58,361 nucleotides of DNA from Ruditapes philippinarum (lineage: Eukaryota), in contig NW_026859270.1 in NCBI RefSeq assembly GCF_026571515.1, positions 62,001-120,361 of the forward strand, in the 5' to 3' direction. Below the pieces are notes generated by a model. That model was not told the origin of the DNA. It worked only from the letters and a program-made list of their open reading frames with translations, and searched no databases. The position numbers and the translations under genes were made by a program. This document shows, one piece after another, positions 7,315 to 58,361 of the stretch (position 1 is its first letter; each line of letters begins with the position of its first letter).

Positions 7315-7461
7315 ACAATTTTCGTGTTTAAATGTTGAATTCTGTTTAAACCGGTGCTAGCGGGCGGTGACGGTAACTTGCACTTTCCAGTTCCGTCGAT
7401 GAACAGGCTCAATCAAACCGAGCCTGCAACATTATCAATTTTGCTTTTAAGGGGTTCCTTT
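7315..7461 (+). mobile_element. Duplicated copy of the 26313 insertion, cut by an assembly gap
   Basis: Same left flank and same motif as 26313-26460; runs into Ns at 7462. Confidence 0.75.
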
Positions 7462-9175
7462 NNNNNNNNNNNNNNNNNNNNNNNNNNNNNNNNNNNNNNN
7501 NNNNNNNNNNNNNNNNNNNNNNNNNNNNNNNNNNNNNNNNNNNNNNNNNNNNNNNNNNNNNNNNNNNNNNNNNNNNNNNNNNNNNNNNNNNNNNNNNNNN
7601 NNNNNNTCTGGTATGATAAAATATATTTTACTGACTAGTATTTACTTTTGTGTGTGCTTCTTTCGTTGGTAGAAGAATGCAGTCCGTGCATCAAATACAT
7701 CATCATGAGTATTCAACGAGGTTAATAGACCATGTCAAATCTTTCAAAGCTACACCTGTCATATGTTTACAACACTTAAGCAGTAAGAATTATACATAAT
7801 ATTTATACTATACAAACTTATGTTGTTTAAATTTGGATTATATACTATAAACATAAACATTGCAGAAAAATGATGACATATTTATAATGATAGAATGTTT
7901 TATATAAAAAAAATTGTGAATGTGTCATTTACATGAAACAGGTTCTTCAATCTGGCATGATACAAAACACATTTTAGACAAGGCATTTTTGAATATTCCA
8001 TGTATTCTATGTTCACTTCCATTGAGTGTATCGGTGGAATACTTTTCGGTATACTGGACTTGAGATCAAATGGTTTTAAACAATTTTAATGCACCTCCAT
8101 TATCTAAATCGCACTGTTATTAAAAAAGTTTGAACCAATATCATATGAATACTTAACTGTAGCTATATCTCAAGAGATAATTAAATAATATTTAGTTCCA
8201 GATCAGGTGTCTTTATTAAAATTAAACCACTTTGATTTAGCGTCCATCTATAAAATTTTCAGAGTGATAAATGTATAAAATAAATTATTAAATACTGTAT
8301 AATCAAATCTAAATTTGCAGATTTGTAGAAAGAAAAATAAACACAAATAAAATGATGATTATATTTTAATAAATTCATTTTTTCTGCCAATCCTCAATAT
8401 AATCAATCATTCTTTGACTTATTTATTTGGAATATAACAGCAATAATGATAAGCTACATATTAATATATAAAATTTCAGTTTTATCTTATGTGCAGTTTG
8501 CATCTGACATTGATATGAATATGTATTTGTCAATAAACTATTACAAATATGAATCCGACTCAATTAGAAATTAGTTACATGCTTGGAGGATCGGCGATTT
8601 TAGCGATATTCCCTCTATTGTCTTATAGAAAGGAAAACTTCATTATGTCGAAGTTAGATACTTGCGTAGAAACTTCGACACATCGGGTCTTCGACTTATG
8701 AATATACATGCATATTGTTATAAGTTAAGCAGTGTGGCGTTCAAATTTATCCTAATTAATTAAATGACTCTAAGCTTAATTTTGAAGATAATTATAGTCG
8801 CATCGTAGTATCCTGAAAATACCAAATGCGATGACAAAAATAATAAGATTGGAGATTCTTGTCATGAATGTAGGAACTAATTAAGGTTAAAGAGAGTGAA
8901 GCATTGCTGGACAATTTGTTTTTTCCTTTCTTTATTTAGTTCATTGAGATCCACCAATTTGTTGTTTATATTTCAAATCAGGAAAATTCTTATCCTGGTC
9001 AGGTTTTATGTTTTAATGATAACAATGTTTCCCTTTATTAGAATCTTTGTCTCTAAAACGGACAAAAATAGTTTCTAAGTACTTGAATACTTCTAATGTA
9101 TATGTTATTCGTTAATTTCTTGATTCTTTGATAATAATTTAAGCGCATACATTGATTAACTGTGAAATGCGACTT

Positions 9176-9578
9176 TGAGGGATGTTGCACTTATTCATAA
9201 TCCCTCATGTACAGACTCAATCAAACCGAGTCTGCAATTCTTATGTAATTTTGTTGTGATAATGCTTCCGAGGGATCACTTTGTTTCCAGATTTTTATAC
9301 TTCACAACAGCAGGTGTCAAGTGCTCTGTGGCAGCTGTAAAAAGTTGCCCCGTACTTCACTTCAGTGTTGTTATATTTTTCTGGTCCTTCGGGATCATTG
9401 ATGCCAGCACTATTAAGTGTTGAGAATTGAGTACCGCTCAAGCCGGTGCTAGGGGGCGTGAGGGATGTTGCACTTATTCATAATCCCTCATGTACAGACT
9501 CAATCAAACCGAGTCTGCAATTCTTATGTAATTTTGTTGTGATAATGCTTCCGAGGGATCACTTTGTTTCCAGATTTT
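9176..9578 (+). mobile_element. Small insertion with identical 120-bp terminal direct repeats (283-bp period, ~1.4 copies); retrozyme-, Penelope pLTR- or TRIM-like
   Basis: 9176-9295 equals 9459-9578. Absent from the four paralogous X blocks (empty site aaatgcgtcttt|aataataa, e.g. ~28081-28100). Confidence 0.85.
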
Positions 9579-10419
9579 AATAATAAATTTACAGCGCATA
9601 TTGATTTTTGCCTTAACCGATTAGAAACAAATATCTTAATTTATACCCAGACAAACATTTGTATCTATATAGCTTGTATTTATAAAGCTCAATTCATACT
9701 GATAGTACAGAAATATTTATAAATAATCACAATATATCTTACGAATCAAATATATATGGATTTAATAAAGTGCCAGAACGTGAGACATACATTGTGAATG
9801 TATGAAATAAATGAGAGTACAGAAAGCAAATTGCAACAATGATGTACCGGCGTTCATTTAGTTAAATGAAAGGTCAACCTTACATTGGTCCATTGTTTAA
9901 TGAAATTTCGAATCAGGAATATTGTTATTCCGCTCAGATCTAATGCGTATTGTTTTCTTCATTTGGTATTTCTTGCGACGTTTATTGTTCAATAGTTAAG
10001 TAAAGTGTTGTTGTGTCGTATAATAAACTCGACAAGTGTTAAACCTTTTGCAAATTTTAAATACAGAGAAAAGTGCATGTTGTAAGCATTCGTTCAATCG
10101 AACCTTAAAATTTCATTTTAAAGAATCAAGCGAGCTGCAACAGAAAATATAGCTAGCTTAAGCATCAGTCAACTTTGAAATATCAAATCACGATGGAACA
10201 AATAATATGGGCTATTTCGAAATGTTGCCGCCAAGTCATACATTGAAAGTCAATTTGTTATAACTCGAATACCCCGTTAACATAAATAAGTCTGCAAGGG
10301 TCTTTATATTTATACATAATGTTATACATTTAGTTTGAGAATAATGTGGTACATTGGTGGCATGCCATTAATACATAATGTTAAATAATTTTAACAAACT
10401 GGATTTAAGGTACACATGA

Positions 10420-24533: not shown

Positions 24534-25526
24534 TTTCTCTTCTATTCTCATTAGAGCAATACTTCATAAAAATTGCTAAAATTATAATATTGTGTTCACA
24601 TATAGATAAGAAATGAGGTCAGTGTCATGTAGTATGTCTTGCATATATTAGTGATTAAAGTACTAATATACGACTTTAATGTATACGTTTCTAAAATTGG
24701 AAATGCATATTTTTATCTTCAAGATATTGAAATGACTTGGTGCCTAGGTCAATGTTGTAATTTTAGTCATATGCTACATATAATACATGCATACAATTCT
24801 AAAATTGAAAAAATAGTTTTATCAAATAAGTCTCAGTATCTAAGTATTTGTTGCTATAGTTTGGTCAGTCCTTCACGATGGGTAATTTTATCGAATGGTA
24901 CATATGTCATACTCGTGAGAAAAACAGATTTTACAAGTTACGAGCTTTCCAAACTATTGTTTAAAGTCCATGAATTTGCTTTCCAAACTATTATTTAGAG
25001 TCCATGAATTTGATAAGAAAAATTGGAATGCCCGTGAGAATGTTTAAAAAAAAGATTCACTGAATTTGATAAGTAGTTATTTAAATGGCCGTGAGAATGT
25101 TTAAAATATTATTTTGAATTAAGGTATTACCATCCTAATGCCTTACCTCCACTTTGAAGAGTATTCAAATAGGCTAACTACTGTTAACTACATTAAAACT
25201 GAGGGCCATGGGTTCAAACCTCAGATGGGTCATTTTTTTCTTTCTTTTTTTTTCTTTTAACATTATTTATGTTTCTTTCCATCCATTTTGGGTATAAAAA
25301 TGTTTATTTTTTATTATTTAATTATTTTCCTACTTAGGGAGCCTAAAAATCCTTAAAATTTACGCGATTGAGTGCCTGTTTTCAAAGTTTCCCTTTTTCC
25401 AAAAAGTATATTGGTTGATCTTGTAAAATATTAAATACTTTCACCGTCTAGTTTTGATTTTATTACACTTTGAAAATATCAGGTACCATATTAATTACTA
25501 GATTAAGCATTATTTAGCCAATCAAT

Positions 25527-25807
25527 AAATAGATGGCAAGTGACCTAGCCATGCGGAGATCTCCTGGACATATGACTTGGGTTAGGGCGTTAAGCCTTTT
25601 CATGTGCAAAGAAGACGCTCTCTAGTTGTACAAAATCAAATTTGCAACGGAATTGATCAAAGAACTTTTAAATAGTAGGCTCGTGAATATGCTTTTTCTT
25701 CCCGAAATTTACATAGGGAAAGAACAAATCGCCGGTGCAAAAAATGACCAAGCCACGTGGAAATCTCCTGACATATTACTTGGGTTAGGGCTTTAGGCCT
25801 TTCCATG
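25527..25807. repeat. Truncated start (~1.4 monomers) of the same satellite
   Basis: Same monomer and same left flank as 54742 onward. Confidence 0.9.
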
Positions 25808-25999
25808 ACTTCGATGACTTCTAATCCAATTACCTCTCTGGCGTGGGATCAATCCCCGGGAGATGTTTTGGTAGTTTAGCACGGAGGAAGGTAGTCTAGT
25901 ACTGGTGTTACTCTCCAAGAACGATGGTTAGGACACTACCTGTCTACATGACTGAAATACTGTTGGGAAAAGGCGTAAAATGAAACAAACAAACAAACA
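25808..25999 (+). mobile_element. Diverged tRNA-derived SINE of a second family, at the large duplication junction
   Basis: Degenerate B-box gtgggatcaatcccc, 3' end catgactgaaatactgttgggaaaaggcgtaaaa plus (AAAC)n tail. Confidence 0.65.
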
Positions 26000-26312
26000 T
26001 CTACTAGATCAAAGAAGGGTTATTTTTGGTATATCATTGTGCAAACAATGTTTTAAAAATCCCAAATTTCACAATCATTTTCTTCAAAAGGTAATCAAAG
26101 AAATCAAAGAATGACAAAAACGTAAATTACATATACATGTAGATAACAAATACTGTTGAATACCTTTAAATGTACGCTATCATTGTTTTGTTGTTGCAGT
26201 TTATTTAATTACAATCTATACTTAGTGCATCAGTACTCATAGTTAACTTAACCCCGCGTAGTATTGAGACTCTAAATTGATACAAAAGTCTAATTTTTAT
26301 AAAGGTTTAGTC

Positions 26313-26482
26313 ACCATTTTCGTGTTTAAATGTAGAATTCTGCTTAAGCCGGTGATAGCGGGCGGTGACGGTAAGTTGCACTTTTCCAGTATCGTCAATG
26401 AACAGGCTCAATCAAACCGAGCCTGCAACATTATCAATTTTGCCCTTTACGGGTTCCTTTAGGAATTCTGATTTTCTCTATT
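26313..26482 (+). mobile_element. ~170-bp insertion related to the 9176 element (shared structured motif)
   Basis: Empty site atgtttagtc|ttaaagacaa at ~14701-14720. Contains aagccggtgatagcgggcggtgacgg..gttgcac..caggctcaatcaaaccgagcctgcaa. Confidence 0.75.
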
Positions 26483-26489
26483 TTAAGAC

Positions 26490-26529
<40 letters not shown>
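26490..26529. repeat. (AAT)n microsatellite
   Basis: Direct reading. Confidence 0.9.
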
Positions 26530-29500
26530 TCAATACGTAAAACATAATTCTGATATGATAAAACATATTTTACTGACTAGTTTTTATTTTTGTAGAAAAA
26601 TGCAGTCCGTTCATCAAATATATCATCATGAGTTTTCAACGAGGTTAATATACCATGCCAAATATTTCAAAGCTACACCTGCCATATGTTTACAGCACTT
26701 CTATAGTAAGCTTTATACATAATATTTATACTATAAAAACTTATGTTGTTTATATTTGCATTAGATATTATAAACATAAACATTGCAGAAAAATGATGAC
26801 ATATTTATAATGATAGAATGTTTTATATAAGTTTATGAATATGTGTCATTTACATGAAACAGATTCTTCAACTGGTATGATGCAAAACATATTTTAGACA
26901 TGGCGTTTTTGCATATTCCATGTCTTCCTTGTTAACTTCCATTAAGTGTATCAGTGGAATAACTTTCGGTATATTCGACTTGAGATCAAATGGTTTTAAA
27001 CCTCTGTTATCTAAATGAAAATGTTATTGTAAAAGTTTGAACCTATATCCTATGAGTATTAAACTGTAGCTTTATCTTAATTAAAGAATAGTTAGTTTCA
27101 GATCAGGTGTCTTTATCAAAATTTAACCTCTTTGATTTAGCGTCCATCTTTAAAATTTTCAGAATGATAAACATATAAAATATATCAGTAAATACTATAT
27201 AATCAAATATAAATTTGCAGATTTGTAGAAAGAAAAATTAACACAAATGGAATGATGATCATATTGTAATAAATTCATGTTTTCTGCCAATAATCAATTA
27301 CATCAATTCTATCTTTATTCGACTTGTTTATTTCGAAAATAACAACAAAAATGATAAGCTACATAATATATGAAATTTCAGTTTTATCTAATGTGCAGTT
27401 TGAATCTGACATAGATATGAATATGTATTTGTCAATAAATTTGTCTTACAAATTAGCATCCGACTCTATCAAAAATTAGTTACATGCTTGAAGGATCGAC
27501 AATTTTAGCCATATACCCTCTCTACAGCCTCATAGAAAGGAAAACTTCAGTATGTCGAAGTTGAGATACTTGCGTAGAAACTTCGACACATCGGGACTTC
27601 GACTTATGAATATACATTCATATTGTCATAAGTTAAGCAGTGTGACGTTCACATTTATTCTAATTAATTAAATGACTCTAAGCTTAATTTTGTAGAAAAT
27701 TATAGTCGCATCGTAGTATCCTGAAAATATCAACTGCGATGACAAAAATAATAAGATTAGAGATTCTCGTCATGAATGTAGGAACTAATTAAGGTTTAAG
27801 AGAGTGAAGCATTGCTGGACAATTTATGTTACTTTCTTCATTTAGTTTATTGAGATCCACAAATTTGTTGTTTAAATTTTAAATCAGGAACATTATTATT
27901 CTGGTCAGTTATAATGTTATATTGATAACCATGCTTCTCTCTATTAATTAGAATCTTTATCTCTAAAACGGACAAAATAGTTTCTAAGTACTAGAGATCT
28001 TCTTATGTACATTGTATATATAATTCGTTAATTTCTTGATTCTTTAATAATAATTTAACTGCATACATTGATTAACCGTAAAATGCGTCTTTAATAATAA
28101 GTAAACAGCGCATATTGATTTTTGCCTTAACCGATTAGAAACAAATGTCTTAAGTTGTACCAAGACAAAACATTTGTATCTATATAGCTTGTATTTATAA
28201 AGTTCAATTCATAATGATGCTACAGAAATATTTATTGATAATCACAATATATCTTACGAATCAAATATATATGGATTTAATAGAGAGCAAGAACGTGAGA
28301 CATACATTGTGAATGTATGAAATATATGAGAGTACAGAAAGCAAATTGCAACATTGATGTGCCGCCGTTCATTTAGTTAAGTGAAAGGTCAACCTTACAT
28401 TAGTCCATTGTTTAATGACATTTCGAATCAGGAATATTGTTATTCCGATCAGTTCTAAAGCTGCAATGACACTCATTGTTTTCTTCATTTGGTATTTCTT
28501 GCGACGCTTGATTGTTCAATAGTTAAGCAAAGTGTTGTGTGTCGTTTTTTACACTCGACAAGCGTTAAACCTTTTGCATTTCAAATACAGAGAAAAGTGC
28601 ATGTTGTAAGCATTCGTTCAATCTAACCTTAACATTTTATTTTTAAGAATCAAGCGTGCTTTAATAGAAAATATAGCTTTGAACTTTGAAATATCAAATC
28701 ATATATTGAACAAATGATATGAGCTATTACGAAATGCTGACGTCAAGTCATACATTGGAAGTCAATTTGTTATAGCTCGAATACCCCATTAACATAAATA
28801 AGTCTATAAGTTTATACATAATGTTATACATTTAGTAAGAGAATAATGTGGTACATTGGTGGCATTCCATTAATACAATGTAATACGTGATGTTAAATAA
28901 TTATAACAAACAGGATTTAAGATACACACAAGAAATGAAGTATATCATTCTCATTGGTGTAAAAAATGAAGTATACATTTTTAATTGATATAAAAATGAA
29001 GTATACCCATTTAATTGATATGAAAATGAAGTATACCAAATTCATTGGTATAAAAATGATGTCTACCAGTTTCATTGATATAAAATGAAGTATACTTTTT
29101 TAATTGATACAAAAAATGAAGTTTAAAATTTTAATTGATATAAACATAAAGAATACCATTTCTATTGATAAACACTTGCCAAGTTGAGTCAGTATTGTGT
29201 GTGACTTGCATTTTAAAAGTCAAAATTGTAATTTCAACAAACATTTCATGAACCATAGAGACGCATAATGAACATAATCTTACCAATCCTAAAAACACGC
29301 ATATATTAGTTAACAATCTGGAACAAATAAATAAATGATAACAAAATTTTCAAAATATACCTTTATATAGCGATATACTTGATATATATATGTCGCACAC
29401 ATATTTCAGTTAAAACTGATTGCAAACCATGATAAATATATTCTTTTCTTATTTGAACTGTCATGAATTGTACATGTCGGTTGTATTGCAAAACCAACAA

Positions 29501-31621: not shown

Positions 31622-33416
31622 TGAAACTCGAAACGAAACACTTACTTTTAACATTAGGGTTAAAAGTGATACGGAATAAGGTTCTATTTATATACGATTT
31701 TGCGGACAAGTCAATATTGTTATACGGCGTTAATGACCTATATTTTTGACAAAGATTAGCACATAAAATAGTTAATTAAAGTGATTAAAAAATTGAAATG
31801 CCGACTTTGTTTCTAGTATAAAACAGTTAATTTTCATAAGTATATTATTGGTATAAATAAGACTGAAAGTCAATGGGGATCAAACGATTTTGAACACACA
31901 ATATGTGTATATTTAATGTGGGGCATACATAAGGCCTCGCAACTCTGGCATGTTTAAAACGATGTATGGGGGCGTAGGCTACCCTTCTTACATAGTGCCT
32001 GTAGGCCGGTTTTAGTAGTAAATGATATATGTCCCACAAATGTATATATTTTTAATGGGGTTTTATGTTATTGGTCAATATGTTTTCACCTATGGTAAAA
32101 TTAAATATATAGTTGATATATATAACTTAGTACCCCTTAGTTCTGTTGTTTGGAAATGTCATTATATGCCTACATAGTGGCATATATAAAAACTGACTGC
32201 ATGAAATAATGCCACTCAACTCGGTCTTATAAATAGGCNNNNNNNNNNNNNNNNNNNNNNNNNNNNNNNNNNNNNNNNNNNNNNNNNNNNNNNNNNNNNN
32301 NNNNNNNNNNNNNNNNNNNNNNNNNNNNNNNNNNNNNNNNNNNNNNNNNNNNNNNNNNNNNNNNNNNNNNNNNNNNNNNNATGTGGATGGTATTTACATT
32401 TATTTTGTCACATATTCTGTTAAATAAAAAATACTTAGTTCATTTTTTATAGCTACACCAAAATTATATATTTTTTACATTAAAGGCTTATTGTCATCAT
32501 TTGATAGAATTAACAATAACTTAGATCTAGCTGTTTTGCTGTGCCTCAAAGTATGTAAAATGTTTAGGTCGCAATTGAACTTTTTTATGTACATTCAATT
32601 ATTTATAAAATCTTTGTATTATTTGTTATATGAAGGAAGATAATAGAGTGAGTTTGAGAATGACAACTAATAACTGTCAATATCGTGAGCAAGAAATTTG
32701 TTGAAAACTTAAAATAATGGTAAAATACTGCTTCATTTAACTTGGTTTGCCTTAGTAACGTTATCAATGGAATAATATAAAAATAACTTTTTCTTCTGCT
32801 TAACTATATTACTATATATTGGATTTTCGGAAATATGTCAGCAATATAGAATGCAAGGGACACATGTTGGAGTTTTATAATGATCCGAATTAATTGGCGT
32901 CGCAACCAAATGTCGTTCGTTGACTCCTTGATAATTTGAAGGCACATATAGCCTCGGAAATGCATATTCAATAAGTTCTTAAGAAATATCAAACATGTGT
33001 TTAATAATGTTCTAATAATAGATTCAGAGCATGTAAGATGTTTAATTTCTGAAGAAAGTAACGCTGAATGTGAATTTATGTGTAGTAAAGGTAGTAAAAT
33101 GTAAAAAAGTAGTATTTCGACTTCCATACAAAATACTTAATTAATATAATTACACAAATTGCTAAAGAGAATAGGAACAGAAAATGGGAACAGAATATAA
33201 CCAATGAGTAACTGTTTGGAAACTGTAACAAGATAAATAAAACAGAAAAATATAAATGATAGTATTTCTAAGGCTTCACTAGCCTATGCGTTTCATCAAA
33301 TTATATTGCCCAACTCAAAACTCTTTTACTTTAAATAAAAGTGCATGAAAAACTTTAAGAAATAATAAAACTGCTATCAGAATAATTTATTCCTTCTTGT
33401 ATCTTTGCATTTCATT

Positions 33417-53784: not shown

Positions 53785-54741
53785 TTTCTCTTCTATTTTC
53801 ATTAGAGCAATACTTCATAAAAATTGCTAAAATTACAATATTGTGTTCACATATAGATACGAAATGAGGTCAGTGGCATGTAGTATGTCTTGCATATATA
53901 AGTGAATGCGACGTAGTTTTAAATCACTAGTATACGATTTTAAAGTATACGATCTAAAATTGGAAAGGATTTTTTTATCTTCAAAATATAGAAATGACTT
54001 AATGCCTCGGTCAATACATTGTGTTGTAATTTTAGTCATATGCTACATAGTATACATGCATACAATTCTAAAATTGAAAAATTAGTTTTATCATATGAGT
54101 GTCAGTATCAAAGTCATTGTTTCTATAATTATGTCAGTCCTTCACAACAGGTAATCTAATCGAATGAGAAAAACAGATTTTACAAGTTACGAGCTTTCCA
54201 AACTATTATTGAGAGTCCATTAATTTGATTAGAAAAATTGGAATGTCCGTGAGAATGTTAAAAAAGATTCACTGAATTTGATAAGTAATTATTTAAATGG
54301 CCGTGAGAATGTTTAAAATATTATTTTGAATTAAGGTATTACCATCCTAATGCCTTACCTCCACTTTGAAGAGTATTCAAATAGGTTAGAACTACTGTTA
54401 ACTACATTGAAAATGAGGGCCATGGGTTCAAACCTCTAATGGGTCAACTTTTTCTTTCTTTTTTTTCTTTTAACATTATTTATGTTTCTTTCCATCCATT
54501 TTGGGTAGAAAAAAGTGTTTATTTTTTATTATTTATTTTCCTACTTAGGGAGCCAACAAATTCCTTAAAAATTACCCGAATGAGTGCCTGTTTTCAAAGT
54601 TTTCCTAAATTTTCAAAAAAGTATATTGGTTGATCTTCTAAAATATTACATACTTTTACCGTCTTGTTTTGATTTTATTACGCTTTGAACATATCAGGTA
54701 CCATATCTATAACTAGATTTAGCATTATTTAGCCAATCAAT

Positions 54742-57700
54742 AAATAGCTGGCAAGTGGCCTAGTCATGCGGAGATCTCATGGACGTGTTCTTTGGGTTAG
54801 GGCTTTAGCCCTTATCATGTTCAAAGAAGACCCTCTCTAGTAATACAAAATCTAATTTGCAACGGAAATGATCAAATGGTATTTTGAATGGTAGGCTCGT
54901 GAATATGATGTTTCTTCCCGAAATTTACATAGAGAAAGAACAAATCGCCGGTACAAAAAATGACCAAGCCACGCGGAAATCTCCTGCACATATAACTTGG
55001 GTTAGGGCTTTAGGCCTTTTCATGCTCAAAGGAGACCCTCTCAAGTTGTACAAAATTAAATTTGCAACGGAAATGATCAAATGGTTTTTGAATGGTTGGC
55101 TCGTAAATATGATGTTTCTTCCCGAAAATTACATAGAGAAAAAACAAATCGCCGGTGCAAAAAATGACCAAGCCACGCGGAAATCTCCTGGACATATTAC
55201 TTGGGTTAGGGCTTTAGGCATTTTCATGTGTAAAAGAAGACCCTCTCTAGTTATACAAAATCGAATTTGCATTTGAATTGGTCAAATGCCTTTTGAACGG
55301 TTAGCTAGTAAAATTGATGTTTCTTCCGAAATTTATATACAGAAAAAGCAAATAGCTGGCAAGTGACCTAACCATGCAGAGATCTCATGGACGTGTTCTT
55401 TGAGTTAGGGCCTTAAGCTTTATCATGTGCAAAGAAGACCCTCTCAAGTTGTACAAAATAAAATTGATTTGAAACGGAATTGATCAAATGGTTTTTGAAT
55501 GGTAGGCTCGTGAATATGATGTTTCTTTTCGAAATTTACATAGAGAGAGAACAAATCGCCGGTGCAAAAAAAAGACCAAGCAACGCGGAAATCTCCTGGA
55601 CATATTTCTTGGGTAAGGGCTTTAAGCTTTTTCATGTGTCCAAAATTTATATACAGAAAAAGCAAATGGCTGGCAAGTGACCTAGCCATGCAGAGATCTC
55701 ATGGACGTGTCCCTTGGGTTAGGGCTTTAAGCCTTATCACGTGCAAAGAAGACCCTCTCAAGTTGTTCAAAATCAAATTGCAACGGAATTGCTCAAACGG
55801 TGTTTGAATGGTAGGCTCGTGAATATGATGTTTCTTCCCAACATTCACATAGAGAAAGAACAAATCACAGGTGTAAAAATGACCAAGACACGCGGAATTC
55901 TCCTGGACATATTACTTTGGTTAGGGCTTTAGGCCTTTTCATGTTCAAAGATCGTCTCAAGTTGTACAAAATCAAATTTGCAACGGAATAAATCTAAGGC
56001 TTTTTGAATGGTAGGCTCGTGAATATGATGTTTTTCTCGAAATTTACATAGAGAAAAAACAAACCGCCGATGCAAAAAATGACCAATCCTCGCGAAAATC
56101 TCCCGGACATATTACTTGGGTTAGGGCATTGAGCCTTTTCATATCCAAAGAAGACCCTCTCTAATGGTACAAAATCGATTTGCATTGGAATTGGTCAAAT
56201 TGCTTTTGAACGGTAGGCTCGTAATTTTCTGTTATTTATGAATTATTATACAGAAAAAGCAAATCGCTGGCAAGTGACCTAGCCATGCGGAGTTCTCATG
56301 GACGTGTTCCTTGGGTTAGGGCTTTAAACCTTATCAAGTGCAAAGAAGACCTTCTCAAGTTGTACAAAATCAAAATTGCAGCGGAATTGATCAATGCTTT
56401 TTTAATTGTTGGCTCGTGAATATAGTGTTCTTTTCCGAAATTTACATAGAGAATAAACAAATCGCCGATGCAAAAAATGACCAATCTACGCGGAAATCTC
56501 CTAGACATATTACTGGGGTTAGGGCATTAGGCCTTTTCATGTCCAAAGAAAACCCTCTCTAGTGGTACAAAATCGATTTGCATTGGAATTGGTCAAATGG
56601 CTTTTGAACGGTAGGCTCGTAAAATTAATGTTTTTTTTCCCCAAAATTCATATACAGAAGAAGCAAATCGCTGGCAAGTGACCTAGCCATGCGGAGATCT
56701 CATGGACGTGTTCCTTGGTTTAGGGGTTTAAGCGTTATCATTTGCCAAGGAAACCCTCTCAAATTGTACAAAATTAAATTTGCAACGGAATTGATCAAAT
56801 GGTTTTTGAATGGTAGGCTCGTGAAAAAGATGTTTCTTCCCGAAATTTATATAGGGAAAGAACAAATCGCCGGTGCAAAAAAATGACCAAGACACGCGGA
56901 AATCTCCTGGAAATATTAGTTGGGTTAGGGCTTAAGGCCTTTTTATGTGCAAAGAAGACCCTTTTTACCAGTACAAAATCGAATTTGCATTGGAATTGGT
57001 CAATGGCTTTTGAACAGTAGGCTCGTAAAATTGATGTTTTTTTTTTCCGAAATTTATATAAAGTAAAAGCAAATCGCTGGCATGTGACCTAGCCATGCAG
57101 AAATCCCATGGACGTGTCCCTTGAGTCATTGGGTTAAGGCTTTAAGCCTTATCATGTGCAAAGAAGACCCTCTCTAGTTGTACAAAATTGAATTTGAATT
57201 GGAATGGGTGAAATGGCTTTTGAACGGTAGGCTCGTAAAATTGACGTTTTTTTCCGAAATTTATATACTGGAAAGCAAATCGCTGGCAAAATGCGGAGAT
57301 CTCATTGACGTGTTCCTTTGGTTAGGGCTCTAAACCTTATAATGTGCAAAGAAGACCCTCTCAAGTTGTACAAAATCAAATTTGCAACGGAATTGATCAA
57401 ATGGTTTTTGAATGGTAGGCTCGTGAATATGATGTTTCTTTTCGAAATTTACATAGAGAGAGAACAAATCGCCGGTGCAAAAAATAACGAAGCCCCGCGG
57501 AAATCTCCTTGACATATTACTTGGGTTAGGGCTTTAGGCCTTTTCATGTGCAAAGAAGACCCTCTCTTGTTGTACAAAATCGAATTTGCATTGGAATTGG
57601 TCAAATGGCTTTTAAACGGTAGGCTTGCAAAATTGATGTTTTTTCCTAAATTTATATACAGAAAAACCAAATCGCTGACAAATGACCGAGCCATGCGGAG

Positions 57701-58361
57701 ATCTCATGGACATATTCCTTGGGTTAAGGCTTTAAGCTTTATCATGTGCAAAGAAGTCCCTCTCAAGTTGTACAAAATCAAATTTGCAACGGAATTGATC
57801 AAATGATTTTTGAATGGTAGGCTCGTGAATATGATTTTTCTTCCCGAAATTTACATAGAGAAAGAACAAATCGCCGGTGCAAAAAATGACCAAGCCATAC
57901 GGACATCTCCTGGACATATTACTTGGGTTAGGGCTTTAGGCCTTTTCATGTGCAAAAAAGACCATCTCTAGTTGTACAAAATCGAAATTGCATTGGAATT
58001 GGTCAAATGGCTTTTCAACGGTAGGCTCGTAAAATTGGTGTTTTTTTTCCGACATTTATATACAGAAAAAGCAAATCGCTGGCAAATGACCTAGTCATGC
58101 GGAGATCCCATGGACGTGTTCCTTGGGTTAGGGCTTTAAGCCTTTTCATGTGCAAAGAAGACCCTCTCAAGTTGTACAAAAATCAAATTTGCAACGGAAT
58201 TGATCAACTGTTTTTTGACTAGTAGGCTCGTGAATATGATGTTTCTTTTCGAAATTTACATATAGAAAGAACAAAACGCCTGTGCAAAAAATAACGAAGC
58301 CACGCGGAAATCTCCTGGACATATTACTTTGTTTAGGGCTTTAGGCCTTTTCATGTTCAAA
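54742..58361. repeat. ~204-bp satellite array with two monomer subtypes, each with GGGTTAGGG; runs off the window
   Basis: ttgggttagggcttta recurs at 54792, 54997, 55201 and onward; roughly 18 monomers. Confidence 0.95.

What the first reader, a model, noticed from the sequence alone, without database searches (positions are those of the whole stretch)
9176..9240. Covarying stem-pseudoknot-hairpin motif shared by two independently inserted small elements: candidate new structured RNA or ribozyme
Seen: element 1 has TGAGGGAT-[GTTGCACTTATTCATA]-ATCCCTCA-TGTA-CAGACTC-[AATCAAACC]-GAGTCTG-CAA (9176-9237, repeated at 9459). Element 2 has TGACGGTA-[AGTTGCACTTTTCCAG]-TATCGTCA-ATGAA-CAGGCTC-[AATCAAACC]-GAGCCTG-CAA (26366-26428; also ~7368-7429). 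The 8-bp stem shows three compensatory changes plus one G-C to G.U, with a 16-nt loop in both. The hairpin shows one compensatory change around an invariant loop. Loop GTTGCA can pair with downstream TGCAAY as a pseudoknot. Both are preceded by AAGCCGGTGMTAGSGGGCG, which can itself form a hairpin. Element 1 begins exactly at the first stem. Known: small self-cleaving ribozymes (HDV-like, hammerhead, twister) define the ends of non-LTR, Penelope-like and retrozyme RNAs. Inference: the topology recalls an HDV-like nested pseudoknot but I find no J4/2 catalytic C, and no hammerhead, twister or pistol core. It may be an unclassified self-cleaving RNA or an RT-recognition structure.
Basis: partly seen in the sequence, partly recalled or inferred. 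Interest (0 to 1): 0.9.

Follow-up and report, generated by a model that had tools for sequence, protein, structure and literature searches.

The report
Structured tail module of mollusc retroposons
The two-hairpin motif is real and conserved, but it is the shared tail signal of a very abundant family of non-coding mollusc retroposons that insert as head-to-tail strings. It is most likely the handle their reverse transcriptase recognises, and nothing found here supports a new ribozyme.

Summary
In 35 distinct copies, 93% of cells pair, against 30-40% in slid controls, and 10 of 18 pairs change on both sides.

It is not shared by two unrelated elements. Element 1 (283-bp unit) is a deletion derivative of element 2's family (630-bp unit). 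The two element-2 copies in the window are paralogues from a segmental duplication.

The hairpin-2 core occurs 20,905 times exactly in this 1.4-Gb genome. Diverged relatives occur in another species.

Both families insert as head-to-tail multimers of 0.4 to at least 8 units. The 3' end falls about 60 nt past hairpin 2, wanders over about 10 nt and reads into the next unit. The 5' ends are ragged and there are no target-site duplications. This points to reverse transcription primed internally on a multimeric or circular RNA.

- The pseudoknot and the upstream hairpin are not supported.
- No Rfam family matches, including hammerhead, HDV and twister.
- Starting exactly at stem 1 is not special genome-wide: 61 such starts, against 34 and 69 at control positions.

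Best reading: a cis-acting RT-recognition and positioning module of a Penelope-like or LINE-dependent non-autonomous retroposon. The scan had already met these 283-bp and 629/630-bp elements on other DNA of this genome. RNA reads and the partner element could not be obtained.

The parts
9176..9581 (+). Element 1: one insertion of 1.43 units of the 283-bp retroposon, arranged as a 122-bp tail part, a 161-bp body and the 122-bp tail part again. The 3' end lies at ...CCAGATTTT, 9578-9581, and is ambiguous against the T/A-rich target.
   Evidence: It is absent from four paralogous sites of the ~10-kb repeat. The target is ...ATGCG(T/A)CTT|TAATAATAA and there is no TSD. Genomic copies are 96-100% identical, with 283-bp spacing in arrays.
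9176..9237 (+). Module copy 1, lacking the upstream G-rich box because the insertion starts here. Stem 1 is 9176-9183 with 9200-9207. Hairpin 2 is 9212-9218 with 9228-9234, with loop AATCAAACC.
   Evidence: 80 bits, E 2e-17.
9440..9545 (+). Full module copy 2. Upstream box 9440-9458. Stem 1 is 9459-9466 with 9483-9490, extendable outward by G.U and C-G pairs. Hairpin 2 is 9495-9501 with 9511-9517. The conserved TGCAA...TTTTGYYGTG follows.
   Evidence: (116 bits).
9546..9581 (+). 3' terminal segment ending in the T-run where copies end (unit positions 120-132 in 32 independent arrays). This is the inferred priming zone.
26311..26489 (+). Element 2: a 5'-truncated copy (~180 bp) of the 630-bp-unit family, ending ...TCTCTATTTTAAGA(C) and followed by (AAT)n.
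   Evidence: genomic copies match from query position 12, at 87-89% identity..
26336..26453 (+). Module of element 2. Box 26346-26364. Stem 1 is 26366-26373 with 26390-26397. Hairpin 2 is 26403-26409 with 26419-26425.
   Evidence: 125.5 bits.
7338..7461 (+). Paralogous copy of element 2 (90% identical, homologous flanks). Its module is 7338-7454 and it is cut by the N run that starts at 7462, which was left untouched.

Best explanation
The motif is a cis-acting structured module of the sense-strand RNA of a superfamily of non-coding, non-autonomous retroposons (283-bp and 630-bp units).

Its parts, in order:
- a conserved G-rich box;
- an 8-11-bp stem 1, capped by a 3-bp extension and a small loop;
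- a 4-5-nt linker;
- a 7-bp hairpin 2 with an invariant 9-nt loop, AAUCAAACC;
- a conserved UGCAA...UUUUGYYGUG stretch.

Proposed mechanism: a reverse transcriptase supplied in trans binds this module on a long transcript, either multimeric or circular. The RT is of Penelope-like or stringent LINE type. It primes cDNA from a nicked T/A-rich target within the U-rich tract about 60 nt downstream. It then copies upstream through one or several units and stops at a random point.

Shown here: the structure and its conservation, the copy architecture, and the position of the 3' end.

Inferred: RT binding, the identity of the RT, and the RNA nature of the template.
For: Structure:
- In 35 distinct copies 93.4% of cells pair, against 30-40% when partners are slid. 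Ten of 18 pairs change on both sides, and 0 of 500 shuffles reach the observed values.
- In 10 subfamily representatives, 6 of 8 stem-1 pairs covary.
- G.U pairs outnumber A.C 65 to 14, so the folded strand is the element's sense strand.

Constraint:
- The hairpin-2 22-mer has 20,905 exact copies, with 0 for the reversed control.
- Contigs from another species carry the same module with new compensated stems (TGGGCAGTA/TACTGCCCA) and an identical hairpin 2.
- Their unique flank is absent from this genome. Only the ~132-nt module region matches, at 86-92%.

Retroposon behaviour:
- Arrays run from 0.4 to at least 8 units with ragged 5' ends spread around the unit.
- The 3' ends cluster about 61-64 nt after hairpin 2 in both families. 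They spread over ~10 nt, and the extra bases match the start of the next unit, for example ...TTTTGTA and ...TTTTATTGATCA. So the template ran on past the insertion end.
- Extra bases occur at a 5' junction, and some arrays are joined directly to the 3' end of another retroposon.

Literature: heavy 5' truncation, partial tandems, non-autonomous head-to-tail multimers sharing the autonomous element's 3' end, hammerhead-less Naiads and their dominance in Mytilus are all described for Penelope-like elements (PMC8557442).
Against: - No autonomous element carrying the same tail was found, so no partner RT is identified.
- No target-site duplications are seen in 78 arrays. Shared flank words match the permutation expectation. 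This is unusual for many LINEs.
- Head-to-head inverted pairs, a Penelope-like hallmark, are no commoner than tail-to-tail pairs: 5 against 5 among 148 arrays.
- Folding energy is not exceptional for the window copies (z -1.2 and -1.0), and is exceptional only for the foreign copy (z -3.3).
- The many invariant unpaired bases would also suit a catalytic RNA.
- Covariation rests on a handful of subfamily-level events. Part of the alignment was fitted to the model.
Confidence: 0.6

Rival explanations
1. The module, or the unit around it, is an unclassified self-cleaving ribozyme. It would process multimeric transcripts into unit-length RNAs that circularise, as hammerheads do in retrozymes.
For: - The architecture is retrozyme-like: short, low-GC tandem units (43% and 40% GC) without a hammerhead.
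- Many unpaired nucleotides are invariant across subfamilies and species.
- Multi-unit arrays need some way of being regenerated, and rolling-circle copying of a circle is one (inference).
- Penelope-like relatives carry hammerheads, and Naiads lack them (PMC8557442).
Against: - No Rfam ribozyme family matches at E<=10, even in 241 nt.
- The HDV-like pseudoknot fails the covariation test.
- Genome-wide, starts at position 1 (61) are no commoner than at two control positions (34 and 69).
- That position lies inside the extended helix.
- The 3' ends are spread out rather than sharp.
- No catalytic core could be mapped by hand onto the twister, HDV or hammerhead topologies.
Confidence: 0.07
2. 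The hairpins act in single-stranded DNA as the 3'-terminal palindromes of a rolling-circle (Helentron/HINE-type) non-autonomous transposon. Such elements are common carriers of tandem repeats in bivalves.
For: - There are no target-site duplications.
- Insertion is at T/A-rich sites; the window target is CTT|TAAT.
- The elements carry tandem repeats and have a fixed 3' side.
- HINEs with 3' palindromes, TT targets and no TSD are described in oysters and mussels (PMC7492417).
- Covariation alone cannot tell RNA from DNA hairpins.
Against: - All of roughly 110 arrays examined have ragged 5' ends with no common left module, no subterminal inverted repeat and no left-flank microsatellite. A Rep that nicks a defined 5' terminus does not predict this.
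- The hairpins lie 60-120 nt from the end, not within the ~60-bp right flank.
- The 3' segment is part of the repeat unit rather than a separate flank.
- Fixed G.T pairs sit in the stems.
- Some arrays are joined to another retroposon's 3' end.
Confidence: 0.08
3. The module is functional in the element's RNA but serves something other than RT recognition. Candidates are RNA dimerisation or alternative pairing, stability or nuclear export, or an internal promoter.
For: - The box AAGCC and the hairpin-2 strand GAGCC can both pair with GGCU(C/U) of hairpin 2 or of the downstream GGGCUU. Minimum-energy folds do close a three-way junction with the box.
- Conservation by itself does not say which function is selected.
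Against: - The long-range helix is not kept across subfamilies. It shows a mismatch in the type-C and foreign copies, no covariation, and RNAalifold does not predict it.
- A Pol III promoter is unlikely, because T4+ runs occur inside the units.
- The constant ~60-nt distance to the 3' end in two diverged families fits a positioning role.
Confidence: 0.15

Closest known systems
3'-tail stem-loops of 'stringent' LINE/SINE pairs (e.g. eel UnaL2/UnaSINE1), recognised by the LINE reverse transcriptase (own knowledge, not tested here)
   Same: A conserved, covarying stem-loop with sequence-specific loop bases lies near the 3' end of a non-autonomous element. The 3' end is fixed and the 5' end truncated. 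Initiation is in a short simple tract downstream.
   Different: Here the module is larger: two helices plus conserved single strands, ~130 nt. It sits ~60 nt from the end. Copies are head-to-tail multimers with no TSD, and no partner LINE with the same tail was found.
Penelope-like elements (especially hammerhead-less Naiads) and their non-autonomous derivatives, such as MRC1 of Chlamydomonas (PMC8557442)
   Same: Heavy 5' truncation, partial tandems and multicopy head-to-tail insertions, complex neighbouring copies, great abundance in mussels, A/T-rich or microsatellite targets, and no hammerhead.
   Different: No RT/GIY-YIG element sharing this tail was identified. Inverted head-to-head copies are not enriched. 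No 30-40-bp 'tail' extension was recognised. A defined structured 3' module has not, to my knowledge, been described for these elements.
Metazoan non-LTR retrozymes (PMC7229834, PMC7761336)
   Same: Non-coding, low-GC tandem units of a few hundred bp, present in thousands of copies in a mussel-like genome, thought to be mobilised by Penelope-like RTs.
   Different: The defining type I hammerhead is absent on both strands. One unit is 630 bp, above the reported 150-450 bp. circRNA expression is not shown.
Helentron-associated interspersed elements (HINE, pearl, MgE, DTC84) of bivalves (PMC7492417)
   Same: Tandem repeats carried by a mobile element, 3' palindromes, no TSD, T-rich insertion sites.
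   Different: There is no left module, subTIR or microsatellite. The 5' ends are ragged. The terminal segment belongs to the repeat unit.
HDV-like ribozymes at the 5' ends of R2, L1Tc and other LINEs (cited in PMC7761336)
   Same: A stem, an internal loop and a hairpin, with a possible loop-to-3' pairing, in a retroelement.
   Different: There is no Rfam hit, no supported P2/P1.1 pseudoknot, no P3/L3 and no J4/2 cytosine. The module lies in the 3' region, not at a defined 5' end.

Membership tests
Hammerhead ribozyme / non-LTR retrozyme | Catalytic core CUGANGA ... GAAA with three helices | tested here: not met
   There is no CTGANGA on either strand of the circularised 283-bp and 630-bp units. 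No Hammerhead family appears in Rfam at E<=10.
Hammerhead ribozyme / non-LTR retrozyme | Short (150-450 bp), low-GC tandem repeats in many copies | tested here: met
   The 283-bp unit has 43% GC and sits in arrays of up to at least 8 units. The 630-bp unit (40% GC) exceeds the reported size range.
Hammerhead ribozyme / non-LTR retrozyme | Expression as unit-length circular RNA | not testable with these tools
HDV-like ribozyme | Nested double pseudoknot (P1, P1.1, P2, P3, P4) with a catalytic C in J4/2 and cleavage 5' of P1 | tested here: not met
   No HDV or CPEB3 family hit. The proposed P2 pseudoknot is 66.7% paired with no covariation and broken outer pairs. The loop bases instead form a local covarying pair, U.G to A-U.
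Twister ribozyme (types P1, P3, P5) | Match to the Rfam models, with conserved L1/L2/L4 nucleotides and T1/T2 pseudoknots | tested here: not met
   No twister hit at E<=10 in 241 nt around the module or in full units. By hand, the AAGCC...GGGGGCG resemblance does not map onto the twister topology. The genome does hold twister-P1-like motifs at other loci.
LINE-dependent SINE / 3'-tail recognition element | Fixed 3' end with variable 5' truncation | tested here: met
   32 element-1 arrays end at unit positions 120-132, with 5' ends from position 1 to 258. About 60 element-2 arrays end at 355-382 with 5' ends all round the unit.
LINE-dependent SINE / 3'-tail recognition element | An autonomous partner sharing the 3' tail | tested here: inconclusive
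   None turned up in ~280 kb of fetched loci or in 7 metagenome contigs. The RT ORF abutting element 1 in L009 is a one-off junction.
LINE-dependent SINE / 3'-tail recognition element | Target-site duplications | tested here: not met
   Across 78 arrays, shared words between the 5' and 3' flanks match the permutation expectation. The window insertion has none.
Penelope-like non-autonomous element | Partial tandems or head-to-tail multimers with 5' truncation | tested here: met
Penelope-like non-autonomous element | Adjacent inverted 5'-truncated copy at the 5' end | tested here: inconclusive
   5 head-to-head against 5 tail-to-tail pairs within 150 bp among 148 arrays. One head-to-head arrangement is seen in the foreign contigs L093 and L094.
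Helentron / HINE | Left module with 5' subTIR, inverted repeat and microsatellite; right module with 3' subTIR and palindrome | tested here: not met
   There is no common left flank, and 5' ends are ragged in every array examined.
Helentron / HINE | Insertion at TT or T-rich sites without TSD | tested here: met
   The window target is CTT|TAAT with no TSD. No TSD signal appears in 78 arrays.
SECIS element | AUGA ... AA ... GA quartet around a helix | tested here: not met
   AUGA is not conserved (element 1 has AUGU). No GA follows the helix. There is no Rfam SECIS hit.

The most novel reading that the evidence does not exclude
These hammerhead-less concatemer elements are copied from small circular RNAs. 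The conserved module, with its 40-odd invariant unpaired bases, would contain a new class of self-cleaving or self-ligating RNA that replaces the hammerhead of retrozymes and Penelope-like elements.
Probability: 0.07. Interest if true: 0.85.

Novelty: new member of a known kind. Interest (0 to 1): 0.35.

Why it matters
It gives a concrete, covariation-supported RNA module that is not in Rfam. The module marks tens of thousands of retroposon copies in a bivalve-type genome and recurs in another species.

If it is the RT handle, it offers three things:
- a way to find the still unknown partner element;
- a way to annotate a large 'unknown repeat' fraction of mollusc genomes;
- an entry to the poorly understood mechanism that makes head-to-tail retroelement strings.

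It also explains a class of spurious 'hypothetical proteins' in metagenome catalogues. As a ribozyme candidate it is weak.

Tried and rejected
I did not try to get round either limit.
- Exact-pattern scans of genome contigs and viral contigs found nothing.
- A full-text search for two motif strings found no paper. No supplements are held for PMC8557442.
- Known RNA families: none at the gathering threshold in the window, and none relevant at E<=10. There are no tRNA genes.
- Hammerhead core: absent.
- Twister: rejected for this module.
- SECIS: rejected by reading the sequence.
- Pseudoknot: rejected as unsupported.
- Upstream-box hairpin: rejected.
- Long-range helix between the box and the downstream GGCUU: considered because it appears in minimum-energy folds. 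It is not kept across subfamilies.
- Sharp 5' end at stem 1: suggested by 4 of 32 arrays, but rejected by the genome-wide counts.
- Target-site duplications: none.
- Inverted-copy enrichment: none.
- RT ORFs next to arrays: L056 is a LINE cut by an insertion. L009 is a one-off junction.
- Earlier notes of this scan on a twister-like motif in Naiad tails were used only as a lead. A look-up by sequence returned nothing.

Full report
**Observation.**
- Element 1 carries TGAGGGAT, a 16-nt loop, ATCCCTCA, TGTA, CAGACTC, AATCAAACC, GAGTCTG and CAA at 9176-9237, and again at 9459-9520.
- Element 2 carries the variant TGACGGTA ... TATCGTCA, ATGAA, CAGGCTC, AATCAAACC and GAGCCTG at 26366-26428, and a 90%-identical copy at 7368-7429.
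- The box AAGCCGGTG(C/A)TAG(G/C)GGGCG precedes the motif at 9440-9458 and 26346-26364.
- A covariance model built from nine variants finds exactly these four places in the 58-kb window (E 2e-17 to 2e-28) and nothing else.

**What the two 'elements' are.**
- Element 1 is a true insertion. Four paralogous copies of the surrounding ~10-kb repeat have the empty site ...ATGCGTCTT|TAATAATAAG. The insert runs from 9176 to about 9578-9581 without a target-site duplication.
- Element 1 is 1.43 copies of a 283-bp unit.
- Element 2 is a 5'-truncated ~180-bp copy of a family whose unit is 630 bp (L078:1501-2130).
- The two element-2 copies in the window share homologous flanks on both sides, so they descend from one insertion through the segmental duplication.
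- The two units are homologous and collinear. Unit 1 positions 238-283 and 31-204 align with unit 2 positions 207-253 and 285-452. Unit 1 is therefore a shortened derivative.
- The motif is shared by descent, not acquired twice.

**Abundance and spread.**
- The 22-mer CTCAATCAAACCGAGYCTGCAA occurs 20,905 times exactly in this 1.41-Gb assembly, and 0 times for the reversed control.
- The element-1 internal junction GCG|TGAGGGATGTTGCACTT occurs 4,507 times.
- A pattern scan of metagenome contigs returned seven contigs with diverged relatives.
- The unique flank of one contig, L094, has no counterpart in this genome. Its module region matches more than 1,000 places here at 86-92%, over about 132 nt only.
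- So the contig is from another species, and the module is the part that is kept.
- The module is open in one reading frame. 142 'hypothetical proteins' of public metagenomes are evidently spurious calls over it.

**Structure.** RNAalifold on subfamily representatives gives two helices and nothing else.
- On 35 distinct copies aligned to the model, 93.4% of cells pair, against 30-40% when the 3' partners are slid by 1-3 columns.
- Ten of 18 pairs have changes on both sides, and none of 500 shuffles reaches the observed values. The caveat is that this alignment was fitted to the model.
- On a MAFFT alignment of ten subfamily representatives, 6 of 8 stem-1 pairs and 1 of 7 hairpin-2 pairs covary.
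- Stem 1 exists as TGAGGGAT/ATCCCTCA, TGGACGGTA/TACCGTCCA, TGACGGTA/TATCGTCA, TGGATGGTA/TACCATCCA and, in the foreign contigs, TGGGCAGTA/TACTGCCCA.
- Hairpin 2 has G-C, A-T or T-A at its one variable pair.
- G.U pairs outnumber A.C 65 to 14, mostly at two fixed positions. So the folding strand is the element's sense strand.
Only the palindromic TGCA is constant, the outer pairs are broken in 5 of 10 and 8 of 9 rows, and nothing covaries.
- In the foreign lineage the loop changes from UUG...CAG to AUG...CAU, which keeps a local 3-bp extension of stem 1 instead.
- The upstream box alone does not fold better than shuffles.
- Whole-module folding energies are unremarkable for the window copies (z about -1) and notable only for the foreign copy (z -3.3).

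**Copy architecture.** Both families occur as head-to-tail arrays of 0.4 to at least 8 units, with exact 283-bp or ~630-bp periodicity.
- In 32 independent element-1 arrays the 3' end lies at unit positions 120-132, with a mode at 121. The 5' ends range from 1 to 258.
- In about 60 element-2 arrays the 3' end lies at 355-382, and the 5' ends fall all round the unit.
- In both families the 3' end is about 61-64 nt past hairpin 2.
- The 3' ends are not sharp, and the extra bases match the beginning of the next unit. Examples are ...CCAGAATTTTGTA...CTATTTTATCAT and ...TTTTATTGATCA.
- So the template continued beyond the point where copying began. That means internal priming in the U-rich tract of a multimeric or circular RNA.
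- There are no target-site duplications. In 78 arrays the longest shared words between flanks match a permutation control.
- One nested insertion shows four extra bases at its 5' junction.
- Several arrays abut the exact 3' end of a third abundant retroposon, as template switching would give.
- Head-to-head and tail-to-tail neighbours are equally frequent, 5 and 5 of 148.

**Does the element begin at the stem?** In my sample 4 of 32 arrays begin at position 1. That sample, however, was chosen by similarity to the window copy.
- Genome-wide, requiring all three preceding bases to differ from the unit consensus gives 61 starts at position 1.
- The same test gives 34 and 69 at two control positions 32 and 40 nt further in.
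- Some of the 61 are 1-nt insertion variants (CGT|).
- The helix also probably continues outward by G.U and C-G pairs beyond 9176.
- The coincidence is therefore not evidence of a processed 5' end.

**Known families.**
- No Rfam family reaches its threshold in the window.
- At E<=10 nothing relevant appears in the element-1 region, in two full 630-bp units, or in 241 nt around the module.
- There is no hammerhead core on either strand, and there are no tRNA genes.
- Earlier notes of this scan mention twister-like motifs in Naiad tails of this genome. I used that only as a lead.
- The genome does hold 25 twister-P1-like hits, best 64.4 bits against a cut-off of 67.2, but at other loci. This module matches no twister model.
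- The AAGCC...GGGGGCG resemblance does not map onto the twister topology.

**Interpretation.** The module is the most conserved, strand-specifically structured part of the 3' region of a non-autonomous retroposon, and it lies at a constant distance from the place where copying starts. The best-supported reading is a cis-acting recognition and positioning signal for an RT supplied in trans.

The architecture matches what is described for Penelope-like elements and their non-autonomous derivatives. These show heavy 5' truncation and head-to-tail multimers that share the autonomous element's 3' end. Naiads lack a hammerhead and are very abundant in mussels (PMC8557442). The architecture also resembles metazoan non-LTR retrozymes minus their hammerhead (PMC7229834, PMC7761336).

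A stringent LINE partner is equally possible. I could not find the partner:
- One RT ORF next to an array is a LINE cut by the insertion.
- Another belongs to a large RT-like family without Pfam hits, and its junction is unique.

The Helentron/HINE alternative (PMC7492417) shares the lack of TSD and the T-rich targets. It does not explain the ragged 5' ends or the absence of a left module. A new ribozyme or a circular-RNA template is not excluded, but nothing here supports it.

**Limits.**
- Own-genome DNA could no longer be fetched.
- The N runs at 1510-1667, 7462-7606 and 32239-32380 were left as they are.
- Earlier agents of this scan reached the same reading of the 283-bp and 629-bp elements on other windows. 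I re-derived the architecture independently and do not count their notes as support.

Noticed in passing
L063:980-1090, L074:1400-1500, L088:512-600 and 23 other places in the fetched loci: A third very abundant repeat ends ...GGGGTTGCGTTCATTGAACGCCGCCTTTCCTTGTTGATCTTGTTT(T/A)TCATATT and contains a perfect hairpin, GCGTTCA-T-TGAACGC. Its exact 3' end often abuts the ragged 5' end of the arrays. Genome-wide, 18 of 69 non-consensus junctions before TCAATCAAACCGAGTCTG read ATT|. This could be template-switch chimeras or an amplified chimeric subfamily.
   Followed up: partly
L009:1653-3065 (-) and L088:1-700 (-): An RT-like ORF family with the motifs IPKLHK, GIPMGTNCAPL and YLDDIF. It has more than 4,154 homologues of about 480-500 aa in public data and no Pfam hit. 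Here it is repeatedly hit by insertions of the retroposons.
   Followed up: partly
other contigs of the same genome (e.g. C5098:38097-38160, C102:237743-238280): 25 twister-P1-like motifs, best 64.4 bits, just under Rfam's 67.2 cut-off. Some are closely spaced on one contig. They are unrelated to the module studied here.
   Followed up: no
window 26490-26540: An (AAT)n microsatellite of about 17 units starts right at the 3' end of element 2. Element 1's target is also TAATAATAA. This may reflect an A/T-microsatellite target bias.
   Followed up: no
window 54600-58361 and 25410-25850: A satellite with a period of about 200 bp (16 or more units) lies at the end of the window, with one related block at 25.4-25.85 kb (families D2, D4, D6, D7).
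   Followed up: no
window 1-53000: The window is a series of diverged repeats with a period of about 7-11 kb (families D1, D3, D5, D8-D20). Element 1 is present in only one of five repeats.
   Followed up: partly
P0121-P0240 (public metagenome proteins): 142 predicted 'hypothetical proteins' share the peptide ...ILLKPVLGGVDGNLHFPVPSMNRLNQTEPATFSIL..., which is simply the module read in its open frame. They are spurious gene calls on host retroposon DNA in metagenomes.
   Followed up: partly
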